Origin: Octopus bimaculoides | Taxonomy: Eukaryota | Assembly (NCBI RefSeq): GCF_001194135.2 | Contig: NC_069001.1 | Coordinates: 34,883,979-34,947,978 of the forward strand | Direction of reading: 5' to 3' | Length of the DNA: 64,000 bases | Part shown: one piece after another, positions 4,773 through 57,650 of the stretch | Numbering within the stretch: the stretch's first letter is position 1 | Layout of the letters: each line of letters starts with the position of its first letter | Notes under the pieces: model-generated | The model's database searches: none | The model's input: the letters and a program-made list of their open reading frames with translations, nothing else | Told to the model about the DNA's origin: nothing | Made by a program: the position numbers and the translations under genes

Positions 4773-5461
4773 AACGATTTCTCCTGTCTACCTTCTCTTA
4801 CTGGTATTTCATTTTATCGGCCACGAAGGGATGAAAAGCAAACATTGAACTGGTCTGGAATCGAAAGCAGAGCGCTTGAAAGCTGGAACGCAAATAACAC
4901 AGGGATGGTATTTTGTGCTTCGCTCTGTCGAATCTGCCAATTTCACCCTGGTTTAGTCAAACAAATCGACCCCAGCATTTATTTTTTAACACCTGATGCT
5001 TATTGAAACGGTTCTTTTGCTAAACCTCCATCTTACGGTTTGCCAAAGTGCTAATTTTTCGTCAAAACATACGAGGAAACAAGGTGAGATGTAAAACTTA
5101 TGCGACCCCATTCCAATTTTGTTTTGTTTTCTTTAACTTCCGACGTAATCCGTAATCTCCATTTGAAACGCATTACCTGAAAATTTTATTTAAAAAAAAA
5201 TCCAGTTTCCAGAAAGTTACAAAGAAACAAATCAAGACGTGTGAATTATCCAAAACTCCTCATTCCACAAGCTCCCAAAAAATGTTTCGTGACAACTTCC
5301 GATATAATTTCAATCGAAGCCTTCAAAAATGTTTCTCTGGAAAATTTCATCAAAAAATATAATGAAACATAGTCGGTGGATATAACACGTCAGTTGATGC
5401 CCTGAATACATCCAAACATGCATACATACATACATACATACATACATACATACATACATAC

Positions 5462-5981
5462 AAGCTTAGAGAAAAAGAGAACAACTACGCCGAGCTACTG
5501 AGAAATTTGCAGATACTCCACCCAGACTACAAGTTCAGATTCATACCCGTGATTGTTGGGGCATTGGGATATGTAACGAACTGCCTCAACAAAAACCTGG
5601 AAAAATTAGGGTTCTCAAAACCTGAAAGAAAAAGGCTGATTAGAAGACTACAAATTCAAGCCATCAATGGAACTGTAAAGATATGTAAAACTTTCCAAAA
5701 GTTTAGCACATAAATACATATGCATGCATCTAGACNNNNNNNNNNCTGCGCATAAATACATATGCATACGCCTAGACATGAAAATATATACATAAAAACG
5801 CATCCATAAAACAAACATACAAATCTGCGCATGCACTAACACCAAATACTGCACACACACACACATATGCACAAATACCTAGATGATGTTGATAAAAGTT
5901 CCAATGAAGGAGCCTTGAATCTATGTTAGAGTCCGGCTCTTTCTCTATGGACAAGAAATACAGAAATGAAACTGATTGATA
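5462..5981 (+). mobile_element. 5'-truncated non-LTR retrotransposon (R4/Dong-like RLE C-terminus plus 3' UTR), copy 1
   Basis: Open frame 5462-5713: KLREKENNYAELLRNLQILHPDYKFRFIPVIVGALG...LEKLG...LQIQAINGTVKICKTF*, the typical K..Y..L / IPVIVGALG / GT.KI end of restriction-like-endonuclease LINE ORFs; flanked by (TACA)n. Confidence 0.8.
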
Positions 5982-6100
5982 ACATACATACATATATACA
6001 TACATACATACGTACGTACGTACGCATATGCATGCATATATAATACAAACATACATTCATACATTCATGCATACATGTACATACATACACACATACGTAC

Positions 6101-6449
6101 GAAAATCAAAGAAAAAGAGGATATATATGGACAACTGCTTCGAAACCTCCAGCTTCTATATCCAGACTATGAATTCATATTCATACCAATAATTGGAGCA
6201 CTAAGTTTTGGTAGTAAACGCTTAAAGGAGAATCTGGATAAACTGGGATTTTCACAAAGAGAAATCGACCGGCTAATTCGTACAAGTGCAATCCGTAAGT
6301 GGAACAATAAAAATATGCAAGACGTTTCTCAAGTTCTAAATGTGAATTTGTCAGTTTTAATTACATCTCAAAGATAGAGCCTTGTATCTTTGTTGGAAAC
6401 CGGCTCCGTCCTCAGTAGAAGATTTATAATAATTAAAAAATAGAAGAGA
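6101..6449 (+). mobile_element. 5'-truncated R4/Dong-like RLE retrotransposon end, copy 2 (frameshifted)
   Basis: KIKEKEDIYGQLLRNLQLLYPDYEFIFIPIIGAL...LDKLGFS...LIR, then a shifted frame QVQSVSGTIKICKTFLKF*; 3' UTR shares GAGCCTTG.ATCT.TGTT.GA..CCGGCTC with copy 1. Confidence 0.75.
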
Positions 6450-9677: not shown

Positions 9678-10021
9678 CCGTAAATCCTCGAGTATAGTCC
9701 GCCCTTGAGTATAATGCGCAGGGGATTTTAGGAAGCTGTACCTCTGAAAATCCTAAACCTTGTGTATAATACGCACCCCTTCCCTAACTTGAGTCAAGGA
9801 GGTCTATATAACGTCCTTGGATTGTAAACATATAATAGGGTAACATGCTTTATTATTATTGTATAGGAGTGGCTGTGTGGTAAGTAGCTTGCTTACCAAC
9901 CACATGGTTCCGGGTTCAATCCCACTGCGTGGCACCTTGGGCAAGTGTTTTCTACAATAGACTCGGGCCGACCAAAGCCTTGTGAGTGGATTTGGTAGAC
10001 GGAAACTGAAAGAAGCCCGTC

Positions 10022-37615: not shown

Positions 37616-39408
37616 GTCCTGCAACAGACTGGCATTTTATTCAGAGAGAATATTGTGGTCTCGTTCACCTATAAGTCGTGGAACCTGGTAACCACCCTTC
37701 AGTCCTAGGGCTCCAAAAAAATATATAGATANNNNNNNNNNNNNNNNNNNNNNNNNNNNNNNNNNNNNNNNNNNNNNNNNNNNNNNNNNNNNNNNNNNNN
37801 NNNNNNNNNNNNNNNNNNNNNNNNNNNNNNNNNNNNNNNNNNNNNNNNNNNNNNNNNNNNNNNNNNNNNNNNNNNNNNNNNNNNNNNNNNNNNNNNNNNN
37901 NNNNNNNNNNNNNNNNNNNNNNNNNNNNNNNNNNNNNNNNNNNNNNNNNNNNNNNNNNNNNNNNNNNNNNNNNNNNNNNNNNNNNNNNNNNNNNNNNNNN
38001 NNNNNNNNNNNNNNNNNNNNNNNNNNNNNNNNNNNNNNNNNNNNNNNNNNNNNNNNNNNNNNNNNNNNNNNNNNNNNNNNNNNNNNNNNNNNNNNNNNNN
38101 NNNNNNNNNNNNNNNNNNNNNNNNNNNNNNNNNNNNNNNNNNNNNNNNNNNNNNNNNNNNNNTATTAAGATATTTAAAAAGAAGTGTGTTATTAAGAATT
38201 AAACGGTGTTTTTTCTTTTTTCTTTTTTTTTCATACGATTTGTAGAAACTTTGTCAGCGCGTGAACTGCGGACGTCTGCTTTTCCATACATGCAGAATTT
38301 ATTCCGCAGAATTCTGTTTTAAGTATCCTATATAACACCACAATTGTTTTCATTTTTTGGAATTTTCAGAAAATATTTGCGTATCTGTGTTCTACACACA
38401 GGAATTATGACAAACAAAAAACAATTAAAAAAATTTTTTTAAACCCCTTCCCCCACATAAATCCTTCGTATGGCCTTCGTCTCCCAAATTCACACACCAG
38501 GCATTGGTCAGCTACAGTAGAAGACTCTTGCCCACGATGCCGCACTGTGGTATCGAACCCGAAACCGACAGGTTGCGAAGCGAACATCGTAACCCACACA
38601 GCCGAGTGTTACTGCTTATGAAGTGTAAGAGACATTATATGAAGCATAAGTTAAAACACGAGTGAAAAAAAGGTCCTTAACAGATAAAACGAAACCCTTA
38701 GATTAGAATGTTAGAGGAATTTCAATTCGACCTGGAGGGATGGGGTTTACACTAGCAGGGAGCTTTATTTAGCTGGGTAGTCGGTCAGTGAAACAAGATG
38801 TCAACTAATTTCATACGCCTTTCTTTGAATCAGTTTAATCCACTTGGATTTACGTGTAAGCTCTTTTCTATGAATCATTATAAATAGAAAATTTATTAAA
38901 CATTACGTAGTTTCAATGTTGTGAAGGCCGATTATAAATGCTTTGAGGTGGTTTGCCATGTACGTACGTCCTATTTGCCTTTTTACTTTGGAAAAAAAAA
39001 TATTGCCCGCATCCACAGCTACGAAGGATCAATTGTAGTAAGGAGCCACTACATGATCGCTCTCTGTGCTAGAAACAACAGCTGAATATATGAAAGTCAC
39101 ACAAATACCGTCTTTTAAGAAAAAAAAAGCCACATTTGATATGATATAATGTGATTCTAAGAAGATAAAACTAGATGACGATAGCTGGAACACTTCACCC
39201 TCAGGGGGACACGCAGATACAGACACAACAACTTCCAGAACGGTGAAGCTCCGGAACATTTTTTTCAATTCGTTCTAATTTAAATTAATAAGGTGTCTGT
39301 GTTTCATTTAATCATTTAAATAAATTTAATATTTGTGTAATTTAGAGAGTGCGTCGACCAAATCCGGAAAGGTTCCTGAAAATCAATGTTATATATATTA
39401 TTTTATTA

Positions 39409-39780
39409 TTTTACTTGTTTCAGTCATTTGACTGCGGCCATGCTGGAGCACCGCCTTTTAGTCGAACAAGTCGACCCCAGGCCTTATTCTTTGTAAGCCT
39501 AATACTTATTTTATCGGTCTCTTTTGCTGACCCGCTAGGCGATGGGAACATAAACACACCAGCATCGGTTGTCAAGCGATGGTGTGGACACACACACACA
39601 TATATATATACACGACGGGCTTCTTTCAGTTTCCATCTACCAAATCCAAACAAATCTACCCACAAAGCTTTGGTCGGCCTGAGGCTATAGTAGTAGCTGC
39701 TTACCCAAGGTGCCACGCAGTGGGACTGAACTCGGAACCATGTGGTTGGTAAGCAAGCTACATACCACACTGCCATTCCT
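39409..39780 (-). mobile_element. Near full-length SINE family B
   Basis: Complete tail-core-head order in reverse complement. Confidence 0.92.
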
Positions 39781-41747
39781 GCGCGCGCATATATATATAN
39801 NNNNNNNNNNNNNNNNNNNNNNNNNNNNNNNNNNNNNNNNNNNNNNNNNNNNNNNNNNNNNNNNNNNNNNNNNNNNNNNNNNNNNNNNNNNNNNNNNNNN
39901 NNNNNNNNNNNNNNNNNNNNNNNNNNNNNNNNNNNNNNNNNNNNNNNNNNNNNNNNNNNNNNNNNNNNNNNNNNNNNNNNNNNNNNNNNNNNNNNNNNNN
40001 NNNNNNNNNNNNNNNNNNNNNNNNNNNNNNNNNNNNNNNNNNNNNNNNNNNNNNNNNNNNNNNNNNNNNNNNNNNNNNNNNNNNNNNNNNNNNNNNNNNN
40101 NNNNNNNNNNNNNNNNNNNNNNNNNNNNNNNNNTATATATATTAGACGCACTGTGTATTTGCTTATTTAGACAGATTCGTTTCTGATTTAAGAGTCTTAG
40201 CAACAATCAATGGCCTCTCGTTATGCTCATGTACTTGAGTACACACAAGTTTCGTATATTCTTAGTCATCGATTTTTATATACAATTTACACACACACAC
40301 ATTCGCACCCGCTCTATTTCTAAGAACTCTTACACAATTCACATTCACCTGTTTTAACGATGGGAGTATTAAACGAAAGTTTCTTAGTGCAATCATCGTT
40401 ATTATTATTGTAGTTATTATTATTATTATTATTATTATTAGTTGTGGCAGTAGTAGTAGTAGTAGTAGTAGTAGTCGTTGCTGTTGTTGTTGATGAACTA
40501 GTGAGTTGTCATCAAAGACTGTTTTGATTTTACTTGTGAAATAAAATTTCCTGCCAATAACGTCTGGTTAATGAAATAATTCCTTCGCAATCGTTTTTCT
40601 TGGAACAATAAATGTTGTCTGACCGTGCGGCAGATTTCGAGGAGGCGTAAAAGAAAAACAAAAGACAAAAAAAAAAAAGAAAAGGTTAAGCAAAAAAAAC
40701 AAAACACGGAAGGTTTAATTCTTGAAGCGAGCGAAAGCCGTCATCCTCGTTTGTCTCCAAACCAAATGCCTAAACGAGTGACAATTATGTTATAATTCCA
40801 ATGAATTAACCAAGCTATCGGCATTCTCTCTCTCCCTCTCCGTCCGTCTCCCATTTTGGGGCGGCAGGGCACGGCTGTGCGGTTAAGAAGCTCGTTTGAC
40901 AGTCGCATGGTTTCGGGTTCGGTCCCATTGCACGATTCCTTGGGCAAGTGTCTTTTCCAACACCCCCTGGACGNNNNNNNNNNNNNNNNNNNNNNNNNNN
41001 NNNNNNNNNNNNNNNNNNNNNNNNNNNNNNNNNNNNNNNNNNNNNNNNNNNNNNNNNNNNNNNNNNNNNNNNNNNNNNNNNNNNNNNNNNNNNNNNNNNN
41101 NNNNNNNNNNNNNNNNNNNNNNNNNNNNNNNNNNNNNNNNNNNNNNNNNNNNNNNNNNNNNNNNNNNNNNNNNNNNNNNNNNNNNNNNNNNNNNNNNNNN
41201 NNNNNNNNNNNNNNNNNNNNNNNNNNNNNNNNNNNNNNNNNNNNNNNNNNNNNNNNNNNNNNNNNNNNNNNNNNNNNNNNNNNNNNNNNNNNNNNNNNNN
41301 NNNNNNNNNNNNNNNNNNNNNNNNNNNNNNNNNNNNNNNNNNNNNNNNNNNNNNNNNNNNNNNNNNNNNNNNNNNNNNNNNNNNNNNNNNNNNNNNNNNN
41401 NNNNNNNNNNNNNNNNNNNNNNNNNNNNNNNNNNNNNNNNNNNNNNNNNNNNNNNNNNNNNNNNNNNNNNNNNNNNNNNNNNNNNNNNNNNNNNNNNNNN
41501 NNNNNNNNNNNNNNNNNNNNNNNNNNNNNNNNNNNNNNNNNNNNNNNNNNNNNNNNNNNNNNNNNNNNNNNNNNNNNNNNNNNNNNNNNNNNNNNNNNNN
41601 NNNNNNNNNNNNNNNNNNNNNNNNNNNNNNNNNNNNNNNNNNNNNNNNNNNNNNNNNNNNNNNNNNNNNNNNNNNNNNNNNNNNNNNNNNNNNNNNNNNN
41701 NNNNNNNNNNTGTCTGAATAATTTATGAGCCGACTCCCCCATTTTGT

Positions 41748-45855: not shown

Positions 45856-45889
<34 letters not shown>

Positions 45890-45892
<3 letters not shown>

Positions 45893-46155
45893 CCTGTGCG
45901 TGTGGTTTAAGAAGCTTGTTCTGCAACCGGTCGGTTTCGGGTTCAGTTCCACTGTTCGTCACTTTTGGCAAGTGACTTCCACTGTAGTCCCCGGTTGACC
46001 ATTTCCTTGTAAATGAATTTGGTAGACGGAAAACTGTATGGAAGCCCGTCGTATATATGATATATATTGGTGCCTGTGTGTGTGTGTGTGTGTCCCCTCC
46101 CACCACTTTTCAACCGGCGTTGGTTTGTTTACGTCCTCATAAACATAGCGGTGCT
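45890..46155 (+). mobile_element. Diverged SINE family B
   Basis: GGGTTCAGTTCCACTG...TTGGCAAGTG...GGTAGACGGAAAACTGTATGGAAGCCCGTCG. Confidence 0.8.
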
Positions 46156-47128: not shown

Positions 47129-47742
47129 TTTTACTTGTTTCAGTCATTAGACTGCGGCCATGCTGGGGCACCGCCTTGAAGAATTTTAGTCGAAAGAATC
47201 GACCCCAGTACTTCGTATTGTTTGTGTGTTTGTGTGTGTGTGTGTGTATGTGTGTGTGTGTGTGTGTGTGTGTAAAGCCTGGTACTTATTCTGTTGCTTT
47301 CTTTTGCCAAACTGCTAAGTTACAGAGACGTAAACACAGCGACATCGGTTGTCAAGCGGTGGTGATAGGATAAACACATACACAAAGACACACACACACA
47401 CAGGTATATATATATTAGCGTGAAAGAGAGATTTACAATATAGAATTGTGATAGGACCCTAGCATTGGGCCCTGCCGTAAGAATACTTGGGAGTTCTTCA
47501 TCAATCTAAATAATACTGTTAGCCTGGTGGGCCAACAGAGGGCTTATGGTGTATTTTGCCCGGATTGATAATCCCTCACTATTAGTTAATATACGCGACG
47601 GACTTTCAGTTTCCGTCTATCAAATCCACTCAAAACGCTTTGGTCGGTTTGGGGCTCTAATAAAAGACACTCGCCCAAGGTACCACGCAATGGGATTGAA
47701 CCCGGACTCGTCGTTAGGAAGCAATCTTCTTACCACACAGCC
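47129..47742 (-). mobile_element. SINE family B interrupted by about 190 bp of unrelated sequence
   Basis: Tail 47129-47400, insert about 47405-47590, core and head 47592-47742. Confidence 0.8.
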
Positions 47743-48121
47743 ACGCCTGTTTTTTCTTTTCCTTTTTTTTTTTAATGTCAAGTTTTAATAAAAACAATTT
47801 ACCATTAAATTGAAGAATTACTAGAAACTGTTTTGGTACTGTACATGTTTATATTAAACTTTAACAAGAAGGCGAGTGACTGTGACTTCGAAGTATCCGC
47901 CTGCTCGCCTTCATCGGACATGTGTGTGTGTGTTTATACGTTCGTATATCTGTGTGTGATTCTATATATGCTGCCTGGATACACAACTCAGGATTGCCCA
48001 GATGAATTTCCGAAAGCTAGCAAAAAATTCTTGCAAAGCAGCAGTGTGTGCTAGGAAATAAACCTCTCCAAAAATGAAAACTTCGGTAATAAATATTTAA
48101 AAAAAAAATACTGTGTGTATA

Positions 48122-48156
<35 letters not shown>

Positions 48157-48358
48157 NNNNNNNNNNNNNNNNNNNNNNNNNNNNNNNNNNNNNNNNNNNN
48201 NNNNNNNNNNNNNNNNNNNNNNNNNNNNNNNNNNNNNNNNNNNNNNNNNNNNNNNNNNNNNNNNNNNNNNNNNNNNNNNNNNNNNNNNNNNNNNNNNNNN
48301 NNNNNNNNNNNNNNNNNNNNNNNNNNNNNNNNNNNNNNNNNNNNNNNNNNNNNNNNNN

Positions 48359-48632
48359 CTGTGTGGTAAGTTAGCTTGCTTACCAACCACATGGTTCCGG
48401 GTTCAGTCCCACTGTGTGACACCTTGGGCAAATGTCTTCGGCCGACCGAAATGAGTGTGTGTGTGCCCTCACCATCGCTTGATAATCGATGCGGGTGTGT
48501 TTACGTCCCCGTAACTTAGCGTTTCGGCAAAAGAGACTAGGCTTACAAAGAATAAGTCCTGGGGTCGTTTTGTTCGACGAAAGGCGGTGCTCCAGCATGG
48601 CCGCAGTCAAATGACTGAAACAAATGAAAGAA
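48359..48632 (+). mobile_element. SINE family B with internal deletion
   Basis: Head CTGTGTGGTAAGTTAGC..., tail GGCGGTGCTCCAGCATGGCCGCAGTCAAATGACTGAAAC. Confidence 0.9.
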
Positions 48633-52979: not shown

Positions 52980-54392
52980 ACTAACACAATATTCGGAAGA
53001 ATTGAAAGAAAGAAATGAAAATTTATGAAAGAAAAGTAACTGTTAATGCATAAAAGCCACAACTTCCTTCTAGTCTGCTGTTAAAAGAAAAACACGGAAA
53101 CAAAACATAATAATATCTAAGCAACAATATCTTCGCTTATCAGTGGAGATTTATAAATAATATCGCCAGCCGAAGTAACATGTTGGATGGAACCGGCGTC
53201 CACGACTCTGTTATTATGTTGATTACATTAAGTAGCTTATAAAGAAAGTATTGTGTGTTTTGTCATCACTAGGATTATGATGACGATGGTGATGAAGATG
53301 ATTACAATGATGAAGTTGACAAAGTCAGTGTTGTTGGATGTTACGATTATTCGAGTTACGGAATTTTAATACGTTCTAAAAGAGGTAAACCATTTTCATA
53401 CGTCTGCACACAAACACACGCATACAAGTGAACTTATCCAAGTGAACATTTGTGTTTGTCTGTCTATCTATTTATCTATCTATCTATCTATCGATCTATC
53501 ACTATTTCTCTGTCTATCTATCTATGTATCTATCTGTCTGTCTGTCTAGCTGTGTCTCTCTTCGTTTCAGTCAGCATAAATTCTTTTCCTGTATCCGAAA
53601 TGTGTGTGTATGCGGAACTTTTACAAGGAAAAAGTTGACACTGGCTTCGAAGTTACTGTCAACTTTTTTTCCCTTGTAAAAGTTGAATAAACGTGTACAG
53701 TACTAAAAAGATTTGAGTAAGAATTAATTTTAATAAGTGATTTTTTTCATAATATAACTCGACATAAAAGAAAAAAATTATATATACATACCTAGATACA
53801 TATACACATATATACACACATACAGATATATGTAATTACACGTATAGAATGTATTTGCGGATACATATGTCTGTGTGTGTGTGTGCGTTTCCCAAGTTAT
53901 CGAACAGGAAAAATCAAAGAAAAGAAGAATTTCACACACACACATACCTCTACTTTTATTGAGAATTTATAGAGAACTTTCTCCTTCAATGCAACAATCT
54001 GGGTGTGTGTGTGTGTATGTGTGTATATATATATATATATATAATTATTACAATTAAAAGGGTAAAGGTTTATCAATTTATTAATTTATTAATAAATCAA
54101 CAATTAATAATTTTTACCAAGCCCTTCGGTATGTAAACACCATTATCGGTGGAGAACTTATTTAAACGTTCTTATACATTTATAAACATAATTAAGGGAT
54201 CAGCAAACATTTGCTTCACCACATACCGAAGTTCAGAAATAGCAGCTAAAAAAGCTGAGACTCNNNNNNNNNNNNNNNNNNNNNNNNNNNNNNNNNNNNN
54301 NNNNNNNNNNNNNNNNNNNNNNNNNNNNNNNNNNNNNNNNNNNNNNNNNNNNNNNNNNNNNNNNNNNNNNNNNNNNNNNNNNNNNNNNNNNN

Positions 54393-54428
<36 letters not shown>

Positions 54429-55369
54429 TATATATATATATAGATATCTTTAGAGAGGGAGAGAGTTATAGTGACGCAGACAGGGCAAATAGAACTCAAA
54501 ATATGGATATATGTATATTTTTATTAATATTTTAGCAGAAGTAACAGGCTGACTCGAGGTTTGGGAGTTTCGTGCATTACACACACACGCGCATACACAT
54601 TTCTTTAACATGAACAGTAGTGACACTGGCTTCGAAGTTTCGGCCAACTAAGTCGTCATTGGACTGGCCGAAAACTTCGAAGTTACTGTCAGTACCATTC
54701 ATGTTATAAAATAATTCTGTACTCTACCAAATGTATTGAATAATACTTCAGTTTAATGTAAAAGTGTTTTTATGATAACTTAAACACACACACACATACA
54801 TGTCTACATTATCAAGCTATCTATCTATCTATCTAGCTAGCTATATATTTTTCTATTTATCTGTTGGTCTACCCTATCTATCTATCTGTCTGTCTATTTA
54901 TCTATCTATCTAGCTAGCTGGCTAGCTATATATTTTTCTATTTATCTGTTGGTCTATCCTATCTATCTATCTGTCTGTCTATTTATCTATCTGCCTATCT
55001 ATCTATTTAATATCTATCTATCCAACACAAGCATAGCGAAGCTAACCAGCGAACAAACTGCAACACACACACACACACACACACACCGATATGCATTGCA
55101 TGCTCCAACGTTCAGCGAAAAGTGTGCAGTAAACTTGATAACTTTTTGATAAACTTAAAACACATCTTTTACGTCAATTGATATTTTCATCTCGTGTATA
55201 TTCGTTTTGTTTCATTTGATACGTTATGTTTAAACGGTTTTCAAAACATCAATATAATAATATACATACATCAATTTAATCTAGTTATCTTAATAGCTAT
55301 TGATTGAAGGAACGGAAGAAAAAACTGTTTTTTCTCCATCTCTTTCTGTGTGCGAGTGTGTGTGTACAT

Positions 55370-57143: not shown

Positions 57144-57549
57144 TTATTACTTGTTTCAGTCATTGGACTGCAGCCATGCTGGAGTACTGCTTTAAATAGG
57201 CTTCGTCGAACGAATAGACCCAGTATTACCTTTCTTTATTTAAAGCGTACTTATTTCATCTGCCTGTTTTGGTGAATCGCTAAGTTACAGGGACGTAAAC
57301 AAACCAACAAGCGGTGGGATTGACACACGTACACACACGCATACGAACACACACACACACAACCACACACATTTATATAATGTACACGATGGGCTTCCAC
57401 ATAGTTTCCGTCAACCAAAAAAGTTCACTCGCTCAGTATTGGACGGGACGGGGCTGTAGTAGAAGATACTTACCCAAGGTGCCAAGCGCAAGGGATTGAT
57501 CTTGAAACCAGGTGGTTGCGAAGCGAGTTTCTTAACCGACACAAACATG
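57144..57549 (-). mobile_element. Diverged full-length SINE family B
   Basis: TTACTTGTTTCAGTCATTGGACTGCAGCCATGCTGGAG ... TACTTACCCAAGGTGCC ... GAAACCAGGTGGTTGCGAAGC. Confidence 0.85.
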
Positions 57550-57650
57550 CCTGGGCCTTCGATAGCAGCGTCTCTTTTTCTTTCTTTCTTTCTTTTTTTT
57601 TTTCTAATAAAAATCAATAAAGGTTCATCAACACTTGTATGTGTATACAA

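What the first reader, a model, noticed from the sequence alone, without database searches (positions are those of the whole stretch)
53616..54703. Two long hairpins 1 kb apart share a core but have unrelated, self-complementary arms; one has pri-miRNA geometry
Seen: hairpin 1 (53616-53684) has 25-bp arms AACTTTTACAAGGAAAAAGTTGACA / TGTCAAC...CCTTGTAAAAGTT (3 extra bases) around CTGGCTTCGAAGTTAC. Hairpin 2 (54621-54691) has the same TGACACTGGCTTCGAAG and CTTCGAAGTTACTGTCA ends, plus an internal inverted segment. It forms a 26-bp stem (1 mismatch, 2 G-U, 1 bulge) with an 18-nt loop and a further 12-nt basal stem with 9 pairs (54609-54620 / 54692-54703). The outer arms of the two hairpins are unrelated, yet each pairs with itself. 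The G-U pattern favours the + strand. Established: Drosha substrates have an ~11-bp lower stem and an ~22-bp upper stem, and coleoid cephalopods have many lineage-specific miRNAs and extensive ADAR editing. Inference: a young miRNA or structured-RNA cluster, or a palindrome that repeatedly seeds fold-back inversions.
Basis: partly seen in the sequence, partly recalled or inferred. Interest (0 to 1): 0.7.

Follow-up and report, generated by a model that had tools for sequence, protein, structure and literature searches.

The report
Hairpins from an old octopus repeat
The two hairpins are fold-back versions of one old, common interspersed repeat of octopus genomes, so they are most likely repeat-derived structures, not a dedicated microRNA cluster, unless small-RNA data show otherwise.

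Summary
Both hairpins are real and fold far better than shuffles (z -7 to -10). They are not isolated and their arms are not unrelated. Each is the 5' part of a copy of a roughly 190-nt interspersed repeat: a conserved core around the palindrome AACTTCGAAGTT, an AT-rich tail, then an A-rich or simple-repeat end. The window holds five copies. I found two more in about 113 kb of other octopus DNA. One of these is orthologous in O. bimaculoides, O. vulgaris and O. sinensis.

In three of the seven copies, the repeat's first ~75 nt also lie upstream in inverted orientation. At the rhodopsin-locus copy the two arms are about 40 nt apart. In hairpin 2 the centre has been deleted down to 6 nt. In hairpin 1 it was deleted exactly between the two direct CTTCGAAGTT, which leaves a 4-nt loop.

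The left arm of each hairpin aligns with the reverse complement of the family's right arm. Seven stem positions differ between the hairpins yet stay paired. Hairpin 1's stem is much cleaner than its diverged tail predicts, which points to arm-to-arm copying.

The miRNA reading has no positive support: no Rfam family reaches threshold, and the hairpin has decayed at the orthologous copy. Expression was not testable. Interest is low to moderate.

The parts
53616..53644 (+). Copy c1, left arm: an inverted copy of the element's positions ~43-75
   Evidence: Its reverse complement aligns with the right arms of all family copies. It pairs with 53653-53684.
53645..53652 (+). Copy c1, palindromic centre CTTCGAAG (hairpin apex, loop TCGA)
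   Evidence: CTTCGAAG occurs only 4 times in the window, always inside family copies.
53653..53684 (+). Copy c1, right arm (the element proper)
   Evidence: Alignments A1 and A3 and the arms alignment.
53685..53777 (+). Copy c1, AT-rich tail ending ...CGACATAAAAGAAAAAAA
   Evidence: Homologous to the tails of c2, c3, c4, r1 and b2. It is 66% identical to the family consensus.
54603..54652 (+). Copy c2, left arm: an inverted copy of element positions ~22-75
   Evidence: Its reverse complement aligns with b2, r1 and c3 over 55 nt, including the supposed 'insert' TTTCGGCCAACTAAG.
54653..54658 (+). Copy c2, 6-nt centre of symmetry (TCGTCA), the junction of the inverted and direct copies
   Evidence: Read together with the arms alignment.
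54659..54711 (+). Copy c2, right arm (element proper from position ~22), containing the perfect 12-nt palindrome AACTTCGAAGTT at 54673-54684
54712..54783 (+). Copy c2, tail, followed by a (CA)n microsatellite
   Evidence: It is 78% identical to the consensus.
47763..47919 (-). Copy c3: the basic element without an inverted 5' copy, ending in A11. It has its own 9-bp inverted repeat GAAGGCGAG (47904-47912) / CTCGCCTTC (47868-47876).
   Evidence: nhmmer E 7.5e-07 to 1e-30. Sequence, weak fold z -1.85, coordinates.
17076..17197 (+). Copy c5: the basic element, more diverged, flanked by (TG)n and (CA)n
   Evidence: E 3.6e-11.
25301..25354 (-). Copy c4: a tail-only (5'-truncated or interrupted) copy
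54264..54392 (.). Assembly gap between c1 and c2. It is not part of either unit.

Best explanation
Both hairpins belong to copies (c1, c2) of an old, abundant, octopod-wide interspersed repeat of about 190 nt.

The element has these parts:
- a 5' region of ~75 nt containing the palindrome AACTTCGAAGTT and a well-conserved core, CTTCGAAGTCACTGTCA;
- a ~100-nt AT-rich tail;
- an A-rich end that often runs into simple repeats.

In a 'long form' of the element, the first ~75 nt are also present just upstream in inverted orientation, so the copy carries a long inverted repeat. The fullest example is the copy downstream of rhodopsin in O. bimaculoides (r1), which has ~75-nt arms and a ~40-nt spacer holding a (TG)n run.

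Hairpin 2 (c2) is this form after a central deletion that left a 6-nt centre. Its 18-nt 'loop' is decayed arm sequence. Hairpin 1 (c1) is the same form after deletion of exactly the 45 nt between the two direct CTTCGAAGTT copies. These copies are direct repeats because the motif is palindromic. The deletion leaves a 33-bp stem and a TCGA loop.

Shown: the 'shared core' is simply the inner, best-conserved end of the family's arms, and the 'unrelated' outer arms are diverged homologues.

Inferred: the near-perfect pairing, especially in c1, comes from DNA-level arm-to-arm copying, that is, template switching or quasi-palindrome correction during replication or repair. The central deletions are inferred to be slippage or repair at the hairpin tip.

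Nothing indicates a dedicated gene. Any transcript through these copies would form a hairpin as a by-product.
For: 1. Family membership. nhmmer with either unit finds c3 (E 7.5e-07 and 3.5e-09). A tail profile finds c1, c2, c3 and c4, and an r1 query finds c5. The family is also present in O. vulgaris, O. sinensis and O. bimaculoides at the orthologous rhodopsin-downstream site and at L127:22578-22703. That makes 7 independent copies in about 169 kb.

2. Arm homology. In one alignment, both arms of c1, c2 and r1 (left arms reverse-complemented) align with the 5' region of the basic copies b2, c3 and c5. The arm profile hits every arm at E 4e-07 to 6e-22.

3. c2's 'insert' is ancestral. TTTCGGCCAACTAAG... 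aligns with r1's TTTTGGTCAGCTAAG....

4. c1's core equals c2's core minus the 45 nt between the direct CTTCGAAGTT copies. The two share the same arm-specific differences (L' CCAG versus R TTAC), so they descend from a form that already had both arms.

5. r1 in O. bimaculoides folds as a ~75-bp-arm hairpin (-65.6 kcal/mol, z -5.0).

6. Arm-to-arm copying. c1's tail is 66% identical to the consensus, like r1 at 65-67%, and r1 predates the species split. Yet c1's outer 20 bp have no mismatch. Arms differ at 5 of 33 scored columns in c1, against 16 of 49 in c2 and 15 of 55 in r1. Seven stem columns differ between c1 and c2 but keep Watson-Crick pairing, and both copies carry derived double changes.

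7. The mechanism is documented elsewhere. Template switching creates and repairs hairpin stems (PMC8794818, PMC10710096) and homogenises the arms of imperfect inverted repeats (PMC13100816 abstract).

8. No conservation of the structure. O. vulgaris and O. sinensis lost 36 nt of r1's left arm, and the fold z-score goes to +1.1.
Against: - There are only 7 copies, so subfamily structure, the true 5' end and the copy number are poorly defined. The estimate of about 1 copy per 24 kb, or of the order of 10^5 per genome, is a rough extrapolation.
- The element's class is not established. I found no target-site duplications outside microsatellites, no terminal inverted repeats, and no tRNA-like head.
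- The 26-nt core of c1 and c2 is 100% identical, while their flanks are 55-65% identical (0.65^26 is about 1e-5). Neutral decay plus arm homogenisation does not explain this. It needs either short-tract repair between the two neighbours or a constraint on the core.
- The core is also more conserved family-wide: 82-94% in the six copies scored over the whole core, against 46-78% in the tails. That is the pattern expected if something functional sits there in the source elements.
- Compensatory changes could equally reflect selection for pairing in the source copies.
- Expression and small-RNA processing were not testable.
Confidence: 0.72

Rival explanations
1. The hairpin is a functional RNA (or DNA) structure of the mobile element itself. 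Source copies of a 'long-form' subfamily are selected to keep the 5' stem paired and the apical core constant, for example for transcription, stability or recognition by a reverse transcriptase. On this view c1 and c2 are fairly young insertions from diverged source lineages, and the compensatory differences are classical covariation.
For: - The core is 82-94% identical to the consensus in the six copies scored over the whole core, against 46-78% for the tails.
- c1 and c2 have identical cores but diverged arms that still pair, with 7 compensatory columns.
- The left arms of c1, c2 and r1 end at the same element position (...GTTAAAG), as expected of an inherited structure.
- The G-U pairs fall on the strand that carries the A-rich tail.
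Against: - Four of the 7 copies (c3, c4, c5, b2) have no left arm.
- Loop size ranges from 4 to ~40 nt, so there is no conserved geometry.
- c1's tail is as diverged from the consensus as the old copy r1, so c1 is not obviously young.
- The r1 hairpin decayed freely and was partly deleted in two species.
Confidence: 0.13
2. One or both hairpins are young, repeat-derived miRNA or endo-siRNA precursors: the + strand is transcribed and processed by Drosha/Dicer.
For: - Hairpin 2 has about 35 paired positions with an 18-nt apical loop and very low free energy. This matches the stated preference for a ~35-bp stem and a loop of 10 nt or more (PMC10710096).
- Inverted duplications created by template switching are a documented source of new miRNAs.
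- Octopuses gained many lineage-specific miRNAs (PMC9699675).
Against: - No Rfam miRNA family comes near its threshold. The best scores are 24.8 bits against a cut-off of 100, and 17.1 against 47.
- Hairpin 1 has a 4-nt loop.
- The hairpins belong to a multi-copy repeat. The 94 curated novel octopus miRNA genes fall into 90 families, none of which shares a scaffold with another.
- The structure is not conserved at the orthologous family copy.
- No expression data could be consulted. The held supplements of PMC9699675 carry no precursor sequences.
Confidence: 0.08
3. Each hairpin arose independently at insertion, by twin priming or snap-back of the cDNA at the palindrome during retroposition. 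This would be a 5' inversion with duplication, as seen in L1 5' inversions.
For: - The tails are A-rich, and a tail-only copy is consistent with target-primed reverse transcription.
- A palindrome lets two antisense cDNA ends anneal, and c1's junction lies exactly on it.
- The junction positions differ among c1, c2 and r1.
Against: - c1 and c2 share three arm-specific differences in the core, and all three left arms end at the same position. Both facts argue for a single origin followed by deletions.
- r1's inverted part extends beyond the apparent 5' end into flanking or microsatellite sequence. An RNA-templated inversion should not do this, unless that sequence is part of the element.
Confidence: 0.05
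4. The hairpins are the ends of a MITE or other DNA transposon, for example a foldback-like or Helitron-like element with a terminal hairpin.
For: The element is short, non-coding, repeated and AT-rich, and it has a strong inverted repeat at one end.
Against: - There is no inverted repeat between the two ends of the unit. The best matches are 6-8 nt of AT-rich sequence.
- No target-site duplication was found outside microsatellites.
- Read in reverse, the sequence after the hairpin lacks the CTRR end of a Helitron (by eye).
- Most copies lack the inverted arm altogether.
Confidence: 0.02

Closest known systems
Repeat-derived hairpins: inverted duplications of SINE-, LINE- or MITE-type elements that form long stem-loops
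   Same: A multi-copy non-coding element whose copies carry an inverted repeat of their own sequence. The hairpin is a by-product of element structure. Some such hairpins elsewhere have become small-RNA precursors (from my own knowledge).
   Different: Here the inverted repeat involves only the 5' ~75 nt of a tailed element, not terminal inverted repeats. Only 3 of 7 copies have it, and the spacer has been deleted to different extents.
Template-switch mutations / quasi-palindrome correction (Monttinen and Loytynoja, PMC8794818 and PMC10710096; inverted-repeat arm homogenisation, PMC13100816)
   Same: A cluster of changes makes one arm the exact reverse complement of the other, giving multi-base 'compensatory' changes in one event. 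c1's outer arms and the 7 compensatory columns fit this.
   Different: No ancestral state at the orthologous locus is available, so no individual switch event can be reconstructed. The identical, imperfect core of c1 and c2 is not explained by arm homogenisation.
Deletion between direct repeats at the base of a hairpin (slipped mispairing stimulated by palindromes; centre-break revision of palindromes)
   Same: c1 equals c2 minus the 45 nt between the two direct CTTCGAAGTT copies that flank c2's apical hairpin. c2 equals r1 minus the central spacer.
   Different: The direction of change is inferred from only three copies. Literature on this mechanism is recalled from memory and was not checked here.
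L1-type 5' inversion by twin priming
   Same: An inverted 5' segment is joined to a direct 3' segment of a poly(A)-tailed element, and the junction lies at a microhomology.
   Different: The inverted and direct parts overlap completely, which is a duplication rather than an adjacent segment. The arm-specific mutations shared by c1 and c2 argue against independent events.
Canonical animal pri-miRNA
   Same: Hairpin 2 has about 35 paired positions and an apical loop of more than 10 nt.
   Different: The hairpins belong to a repeat family, match no miRNA family, and have variable geometry among relatives. Hairpin 1's loop is 4 nt, and there is no evidence of processing.
SINE 'highly conserved domains' (CORE, V, Deu, Nin, Ceph; PMC5804259)
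   Same: A short central or 5' block is much better conserved than the rest of a short retroposon-like repeat.

Membership tests
Canonical animal miRNA gene | A hairpin with a stem of about 35 bp and an unstructured apical loop of roughly 10 nt or more | tested here: inconclusive
   Hairpin 2 meets this (26-bp upper stem, 9 basal pairs, 18-nt loop). Hairpin 1 does not (33-bp stem, 4-nt loop).
Canonical animal miRNA gene | Reads of ~22 nt from both arms with homogeneous 5' ends and 2-nt 3' overhangs | not testable with these tools
   No small-RNA data are accessible. PRJNA791920 / GSE192550 is named in PMC9699675.
Canonical animal miRNA gene | A match to a described miRNA family | tested here: not met
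   Rfam at gathering thresholds gives 0 hits. The best sub-threshold hits are mir-2063 at 24.8 bits (cut-off 100) and mir-2253 at 17.1 bits (cut-off 47). MirGeneDB itself could not be searched.
Canonical animal miRNA gene | A single-copy or low-copy locus with the structure conserved in related species | tested here: not met
   There are 7 family copies in about 169 kb. At the only copy with known orthologues, the hairpin is lost in 2 of 3 species. Orthologues of c1 and c2 themselves could not be fetched.
Interspersed repeat family | Several dispersed copies with different flanks, in more than one genome | tested here: met
   c1-c5 in the window, r1 in three species and b2 in O. bimaculoides. 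The flanks are unrelated apart from microsatellites.
Non-LTR retroposon (SINE-like) | An A-rich or simple-repeat 3' end on one strand | tested here: met
   c3 ends in A11, c1 in AAAAGAAAAAAA, and r1 and b2 in AAAAA(A). c2, c4 and c5 run into (CA)n.
Non-LTR retroposon (SINE-like) | Target-site duplications of variable length flanking each copy | tested here: inconclusive
   Only c2 shows a flanking direct repeat, and it is (CA)n microsatellite.
Non-LTR retroposon (SINE-like) | An internal polymerase III promoter or a tRNA-, 5S- or 7SL-derived head | tested here: not met
   ARAGORN finds no tRNA-like sequence in the window, and there is no Rfam hit. The element may be a LINE 3' fragment or an unclassified SINE. 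O. vulgaris has 893 unclassified SINE families with recently active insertions (PMC13282606).
MITE / TIR DNA transposon | Terminal inverted repeats at both ends of the unit plus a fixed-length target-site duplication | tested here: not met
   The best end-to-end inverted match is 6-8 nt of AT-rich sequence, and there is no target-site duplication.
Helitron | A 3' hairpin 10-12 nt upstream of a CTRR terminus, a 5' TC, and insertion between A and T | tested here: not met
   Read in reverse orientation, the sequences after the hairpins (CCGCATAC..., AAATGTGT..., ATCGGACA...) contain no CTRR (by eye).
Template-switch / quasi-palindrome correction product | Clustered changes in one arm that equal the reverse complement of the other arm, relative to an ancestral state | tested here: inconclusive
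   With other family copies as outgroups, c1 has 3 or more derived changes shared by both arms, and c2 has 1 to 4. No orthologous outgroup is available.

The most novel reading that the evidence does not exclude
The repeat family carries a selectively maintained structured element. Under this reading, the invariant 26-nt core with co-varying arms is a functional hairpin. It could be needed for the element's own propagation, or it could have been co-opted in some copies as a small-RNA precursor. Either way, an abundant octopod repeat would act as a standing nursery of miRNA-shaped hairpins, refreshed by fold-back copying at a built-in palindrome.
Probability: 0.1. Interest if true: 0.5.

Novelty: new member of a known kind. 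Interest (0 to 1): 0.25.

Why it matters
The main value is as a caution. In repeat-rich cephalopod genomes, a long, thermodynamically outstanding hairpin with 'compensatory' arm differences can be produced entirely by an interspersed repeat that carries an inverted copy of its own 5' end. Hairpin shape and covariation between paralogous copies are therefore not evidence of an RNA gene.

There is a smaller positive point. The family has a built-in 12-nt palindrome, central deletions of different sizes, and signs of arm homogenisation. With whole genomes, that makes it a convenient natural series for studying how inverted repeats are created, shortened and 'perfected'. This is the raw material from which new miRNAs have been proposed to arise (PMC10710096).

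Tried and rejected
- Translated frames across the hairpins, used as bait in the 5.8-billion-protein collection to fish out other genomic copies: no hit. Exact look-ups of the ORFs over the hairpins: not on record.
- Scan of metagenome contigs for the core CTTCGAAGTYACWGTCA: 120 or more hits, all chance. None shares the tail.
- Supplements of the octopus miRNA paper: they hold k-mer tables and no precursor sequences, so the negative search is uninformative. Full-text search for the core sequence in 8 million papers: nothing.
- A LINE C-terminal fragment from the window as protein bait: no hit. Pfam scans of the window's best ORFs: nothing.
- One look-up spent on P0039, which turned out to be bacterial. 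L125 (an ENA contig) shares no repeats with the window and was dropped.
- Hairpin 2 as 'hairpin 1 plus a 35-nt insertion with a 10-nt target-site duplication': rejected, because the 'insert' aligns with the rhodopsin-locus copy. The insert has no other copy in the window.
- c1 and c2 as a tandem or segmental duplicate, or as haplotype copies across the gap: rejected. The flanks do not align, and the tails are only 65% identical.
- Helitron, MITE and tRNA-derived SINE head: features not found.
- The c3 9-bp inverted repeat as a clean template-switch cluster: downgraded. The whole c3 5' region is about 50% diverged from r1 and b2, and the chance of such a repeat arising at random is roughly 0.01.
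Full report
**1. The observation.**
As RNA, hairpin 1 (H1) folds into a 33-bp stem with a 3-nt bulge and a TCGA loop. Its energy is -32 to -34.3 kcal/mol, with z -7.1 to -8.4. Hairpin 2 (H2) folds into a 26-bp upper stem, 9 basal pairs and an 18-nt apical region. Its energy is -48.8 to -53.5 kcal/mol, with z -9.5 to -9.7. No shuffle out of 200 reached either value.

The reverse strands fold almost as well (-29.9 and -52.1 kcal/mol), so the strand preference from two G-U pairs is weak. The shared 17-mers are exact, and the 26-nt core occurs nowhere else in the window. Among inverted repeats with short spacers in the whole 64 kb, everything else of comparable length is microsatellite.

The assembly gap (54264-54392) lies between the two structures and touches neither. 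Only their spacing of about 985 nt and their order depend on it.

**2. They are copies of a repeat.**
The ~75 nt downstream of each hairpin also align with each other. In that comparison, 14 of 2470 random real windows scored as well.

nhmmer with either unit finds a third copy on the minus strand at 47763-47919 (c3; E 7.5e-07 and 3.5e-09). A tail profile adds a tail-only copy at 25301-25354 (c4). A longer query adds a fifth at 17076-17197 (c5).

All copies share three parts (alignments A1 and A3):
- a core, CTTCGAAGT(C/T)AC(T/A)(G/A)TCA;
- a block ending in ...CTTGTTAAAG;
- a ~100-nt AT-rich tail that ends A-rich (A11 in c3, AAAAGAAAAAAA in c1) or runs into (CA)n.

The octamer CTTCGAAG occurs four times in the window, always inside these copies.

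**3. Getting octopus DNA.**
No cephalopod genome is directly searchable with these tools. I therefore used a composite protein query and obtained octopus rhodopsin and two octopus 'uncharacterised' proteins. I then fetched their loci:
- L121, L123 and L127 from O. bimaculoides GCA_001194135.2;
- L122 and L128 from O. vulgaris;
- L124 from O. sinensis.

These loci share many repeats with the window at 65-89% identity, which confirms an octopus origin. An unrelated ENA contig shares none. The window's 12.8% N resembles the O. bimaculoides loci (7-16% N). The O. vulgaris and O. sinensis loci have none. This similarity is only an inference about the species.

**4. The family elsewhere.**
A copy (r1) lies about 4 kb downstream of rhodopsin at the orthologous position in all three species. 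The family is therefore older than the O. bimaculoides / O. vulgaris split. Another copy (b2) lies at L127:22578-22703.

In total there are 7 independent copies in about 169 kb of non-redundant octopus sequence. That suggests roughly one copy per 24 kb, or of the order of 10^5 per genome. This is a rough extrapolation from a small sample.

**5. What the hairpins are.**
The O. bimaculoides r1 copy is the key. Upstream of its core it carries CATCTTTAACGAGAAGAGGATCGACAGTGACTTCAAAGTTTTGGTCAGCTAAGCCACAATCAGATTGTCAG, then a (TG)n run and a short spacer, then the element proper.

Reverse-complemented, that upstream block aligns base for base with the first ~75 nt of the basic copies b2, c3 and c5. 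So do the left arms of c2 and c1 (arm-profile hits E 4e-07 to 6e-22). The 'long form' of the element is therefore the element plus an inverted copy of its own 5' region.

- In r1 the arms are ~75 nt with a ~40-nt loop (-65.6 kcal/mol, z -5.0).
- In c2 the centre is reduced to 6 nt (TCGTCA, 54653-54658). The supposed 'internal inverted segment' TTTCGGCCAACTAAG... is ancestral arm sequence.
- In c1 the whole apex is gone. c1's core is exactly c2's core minus the 45 nt between the two copies of CTTCGAAGTT. These are direct repeats because the motif is part of the palindrome AACTTCGAAGTT. This is the classical signature of deletion between direct repeats held together at the base of a hairpin (mechanism recalled from my own knowledge).

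**6. Are the outer arms unrelated?**
No. Across 40 homologous columns of the c1 and c2 arm alignment (40 columns in all, the outermost three unpaired in both):
- 21 hold the same Watson-Crick pair in both copies;
- 7 hold different Watson-Crick pairs;
- the rest hold wobbles or mismatches.

c1 and c2 also share three arm-specific differences in the core (left CCAG versus right TTAC). They therefore descend from a form that already had both arms. All three left arms (c1, c2, r1) end at the same element position. A single origin followed by central deletions is more parsimonious than three independent inversions.

**7. Why the arms still pair.**
- c1's tail is 66% identical to a leave-one-out family consensus. 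That is the same as r1 (65-67%), a copy older than the species split. Yet c1's outer 20 bp have no mismatch.
- Its arms differ at 5 of 33 scored columns, 3 of them in the core. c2's arms differ at 16 of 49, and r1's at 15 of 55.
- Both c1 and c2 carry derived bases shared by both arms. Examples are c1's GTAAAAG against GTTAAAG elsewhere, and c2's CATG against CTTG.

Independent neutral decay cannot give this pattern. Either one arm was recopied from the other after insertion, or pairing was selected in the source elements.

Recopying is a documented process. Template switching and quasi-palindrome correction can create and repair stems in one event (PMC8794818, PMC10710096). Template switching can also homogenise the arms of imperfect inverted repeats (PMC13100816). 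I favour the DNA-level process for three reasons:
- 4 of the 7 copies lack the left arm;
- loop sizes range from 4 to ~40 nt;
- the r1 hairpin decayed freely and lost 36 nt of its left arm in O. vulgaris and O. sinensis (fold z +1.1).

**8. What remains unexplained.**
The 26-nt core of c1 and c2 is identical, although their flanking arms are about 55% identical and their tails 65% identical (0.65^26 is about 1e-5). Family-wide, the core is 82-94% identical to the consensus in the six copies scored over the whole core, against 46-78% for the tails.

Two explanations are possible:
- short-tract repair between the two neighbouring copies after a break at the palindrome tip;
- a real constraint on the core in the source elements.

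With seven copies I cannot decide between them.

**9. Class of the element.**
The following point to a retroposon (an unclassified SINE or a LINE 3' end):
- the A-rich end on one strand;
- the simple-repeat tails;
- a tail-only copy;
- no terminal inverted repeats.

However, target-site duplications could not be shown outside microsatellites. No tRNA-like head was found either. O. vulgaris is reported to be 66% repeats, with 11.6% SINEs. It has 893 unclassified SINE families among its recently active insertions (PMC13282606), so an unnamed family is unremarkable. Helitron and MITE features are absent.

**10. The miRNA reading.**
- No Rfam family reaches its threshold. The best sub-threshold scores are far below the cut-offs.
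- H1's 4-nt loop is unlike a Drosha substrate. H2's proportions are what any ~50-nt inverted duplication gives.
- Curated octopus miRNAs comprise 94 novel genes in 90 families, and no two novel families share a scaffold (PMC9699675). A pair of hairpins from a repeat with many copies does not fit that profile.
- Expression could not be tested, so a repeat-derived small-RNA source is not excluded (my estimate is about 0.08).

**11. Verdict.**
The interpretation as an RNA gene cluster is not supported. This is a new example of a known kind of thing: repeat-derived inverted duplications, shortened and 'perfected' at the DNA level. Interest is low to moderate.

Noticed in passing
window 47600-47760 (-), and also 319-423, 9863-10012, 24698-24847, 28845-29035, 30715-30805, 38475-38617, 39623-39781, 40868-40967, 45887-46033, 48358-48439, 57403-57614: A tRNA-like SINE (GGCGTGGCTGTGTGGTAAGAAG...GGGTTCAATCCCA) is present in at least 12 copies in the window. 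One copy sits directly after c3's poly(A). Its translated frames match O. bimaculoides and O. vulgaris 'uncharacterised' gene models (P0006, P0040, P0044). This suggests SINE-derived exons, or spurious gene models, in the annotations.
   Followed up: partly
L122:18128-18296, L124:18130-18298 and L123:18312-18515: At the rhodopsin-downstream copy, O. vulgaris and O. sinensis lack 36 nt (CAGTGACTTCAAAGTTTTGGTCAGCTAAGCCACAAT) that are present in O. bimaculoides. The deletion is bounded by CAG microhomology and removes half of the left arm. The fold z-score changes from -5.0 to +1.1.
   Followed up: yes
window 47904-47912 and 47868-47876 (minus strand): Copy c3 has a perfect 9-bp GC-rich inverted repeat, GAAGGCGAG / CTCGCCTTC, between its 5' region and its right arm. 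This repeat is absent from r1 and b2. It may be a small template-switch product, but the surrounding region is about 50% diverged and the probability of it arising by chance is roughly 0.01.
   Followed up: partly
window 53602-53614, 54578-54600, 47921-47934, 17045-17075 and L123 ~18290-18311: Every copy has a CA or TG microsatellite within about 10-25 nt of its 5' boundary. Only 16% of window positions lie that close to such a run. Several copies also end in (CA)n. Either the element carries microsatellites at its ends, or it inserts into them, or it seeds them.
   Followed up: partly
window 14012-14197 (+): An ORF fragment (…FAMKPPQFWEEGIFKLKERWKRTVQQNGSYLVD) resembles the C-terminus of mariner-type transposases. 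This is a judgement by eye, and Pfam found nothing.
   Followed up: no
window 5366-5710 and 5976-6374 (+): Two adjacent, degenerate copies of a LINE ORF2 C-terminal region (…FIPVIVGALGYVTNCLNKNLEKLGF…). The chimeric bait, which included the first copy among other segments, recovered ENA reverse-transcriptase proteins P0003 and P0004 at ~58-59% identity; which bait segment they matched was not checked.
   Followed up: partly
window 53783-53886 and 53989-54052: Rfam scores of up to 40 bits for mir-3149, mir-297, mir-1277 and mir-568 fall on TA/TG/CA low-complexity sequence between the two hairpins. All are far below the gathering cut-offs and are composition artefacts.
   Followed up: yes
whole window: The window contains 8174 N (12.8%) in many gaps, with GC 38.7%. 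This density of gaps matches the O. bimaculoides GCA_001194135.2 loci fetched here. It does not match the gap-free O. vulgaris and O. sinensis loci.
   Followed up: partly
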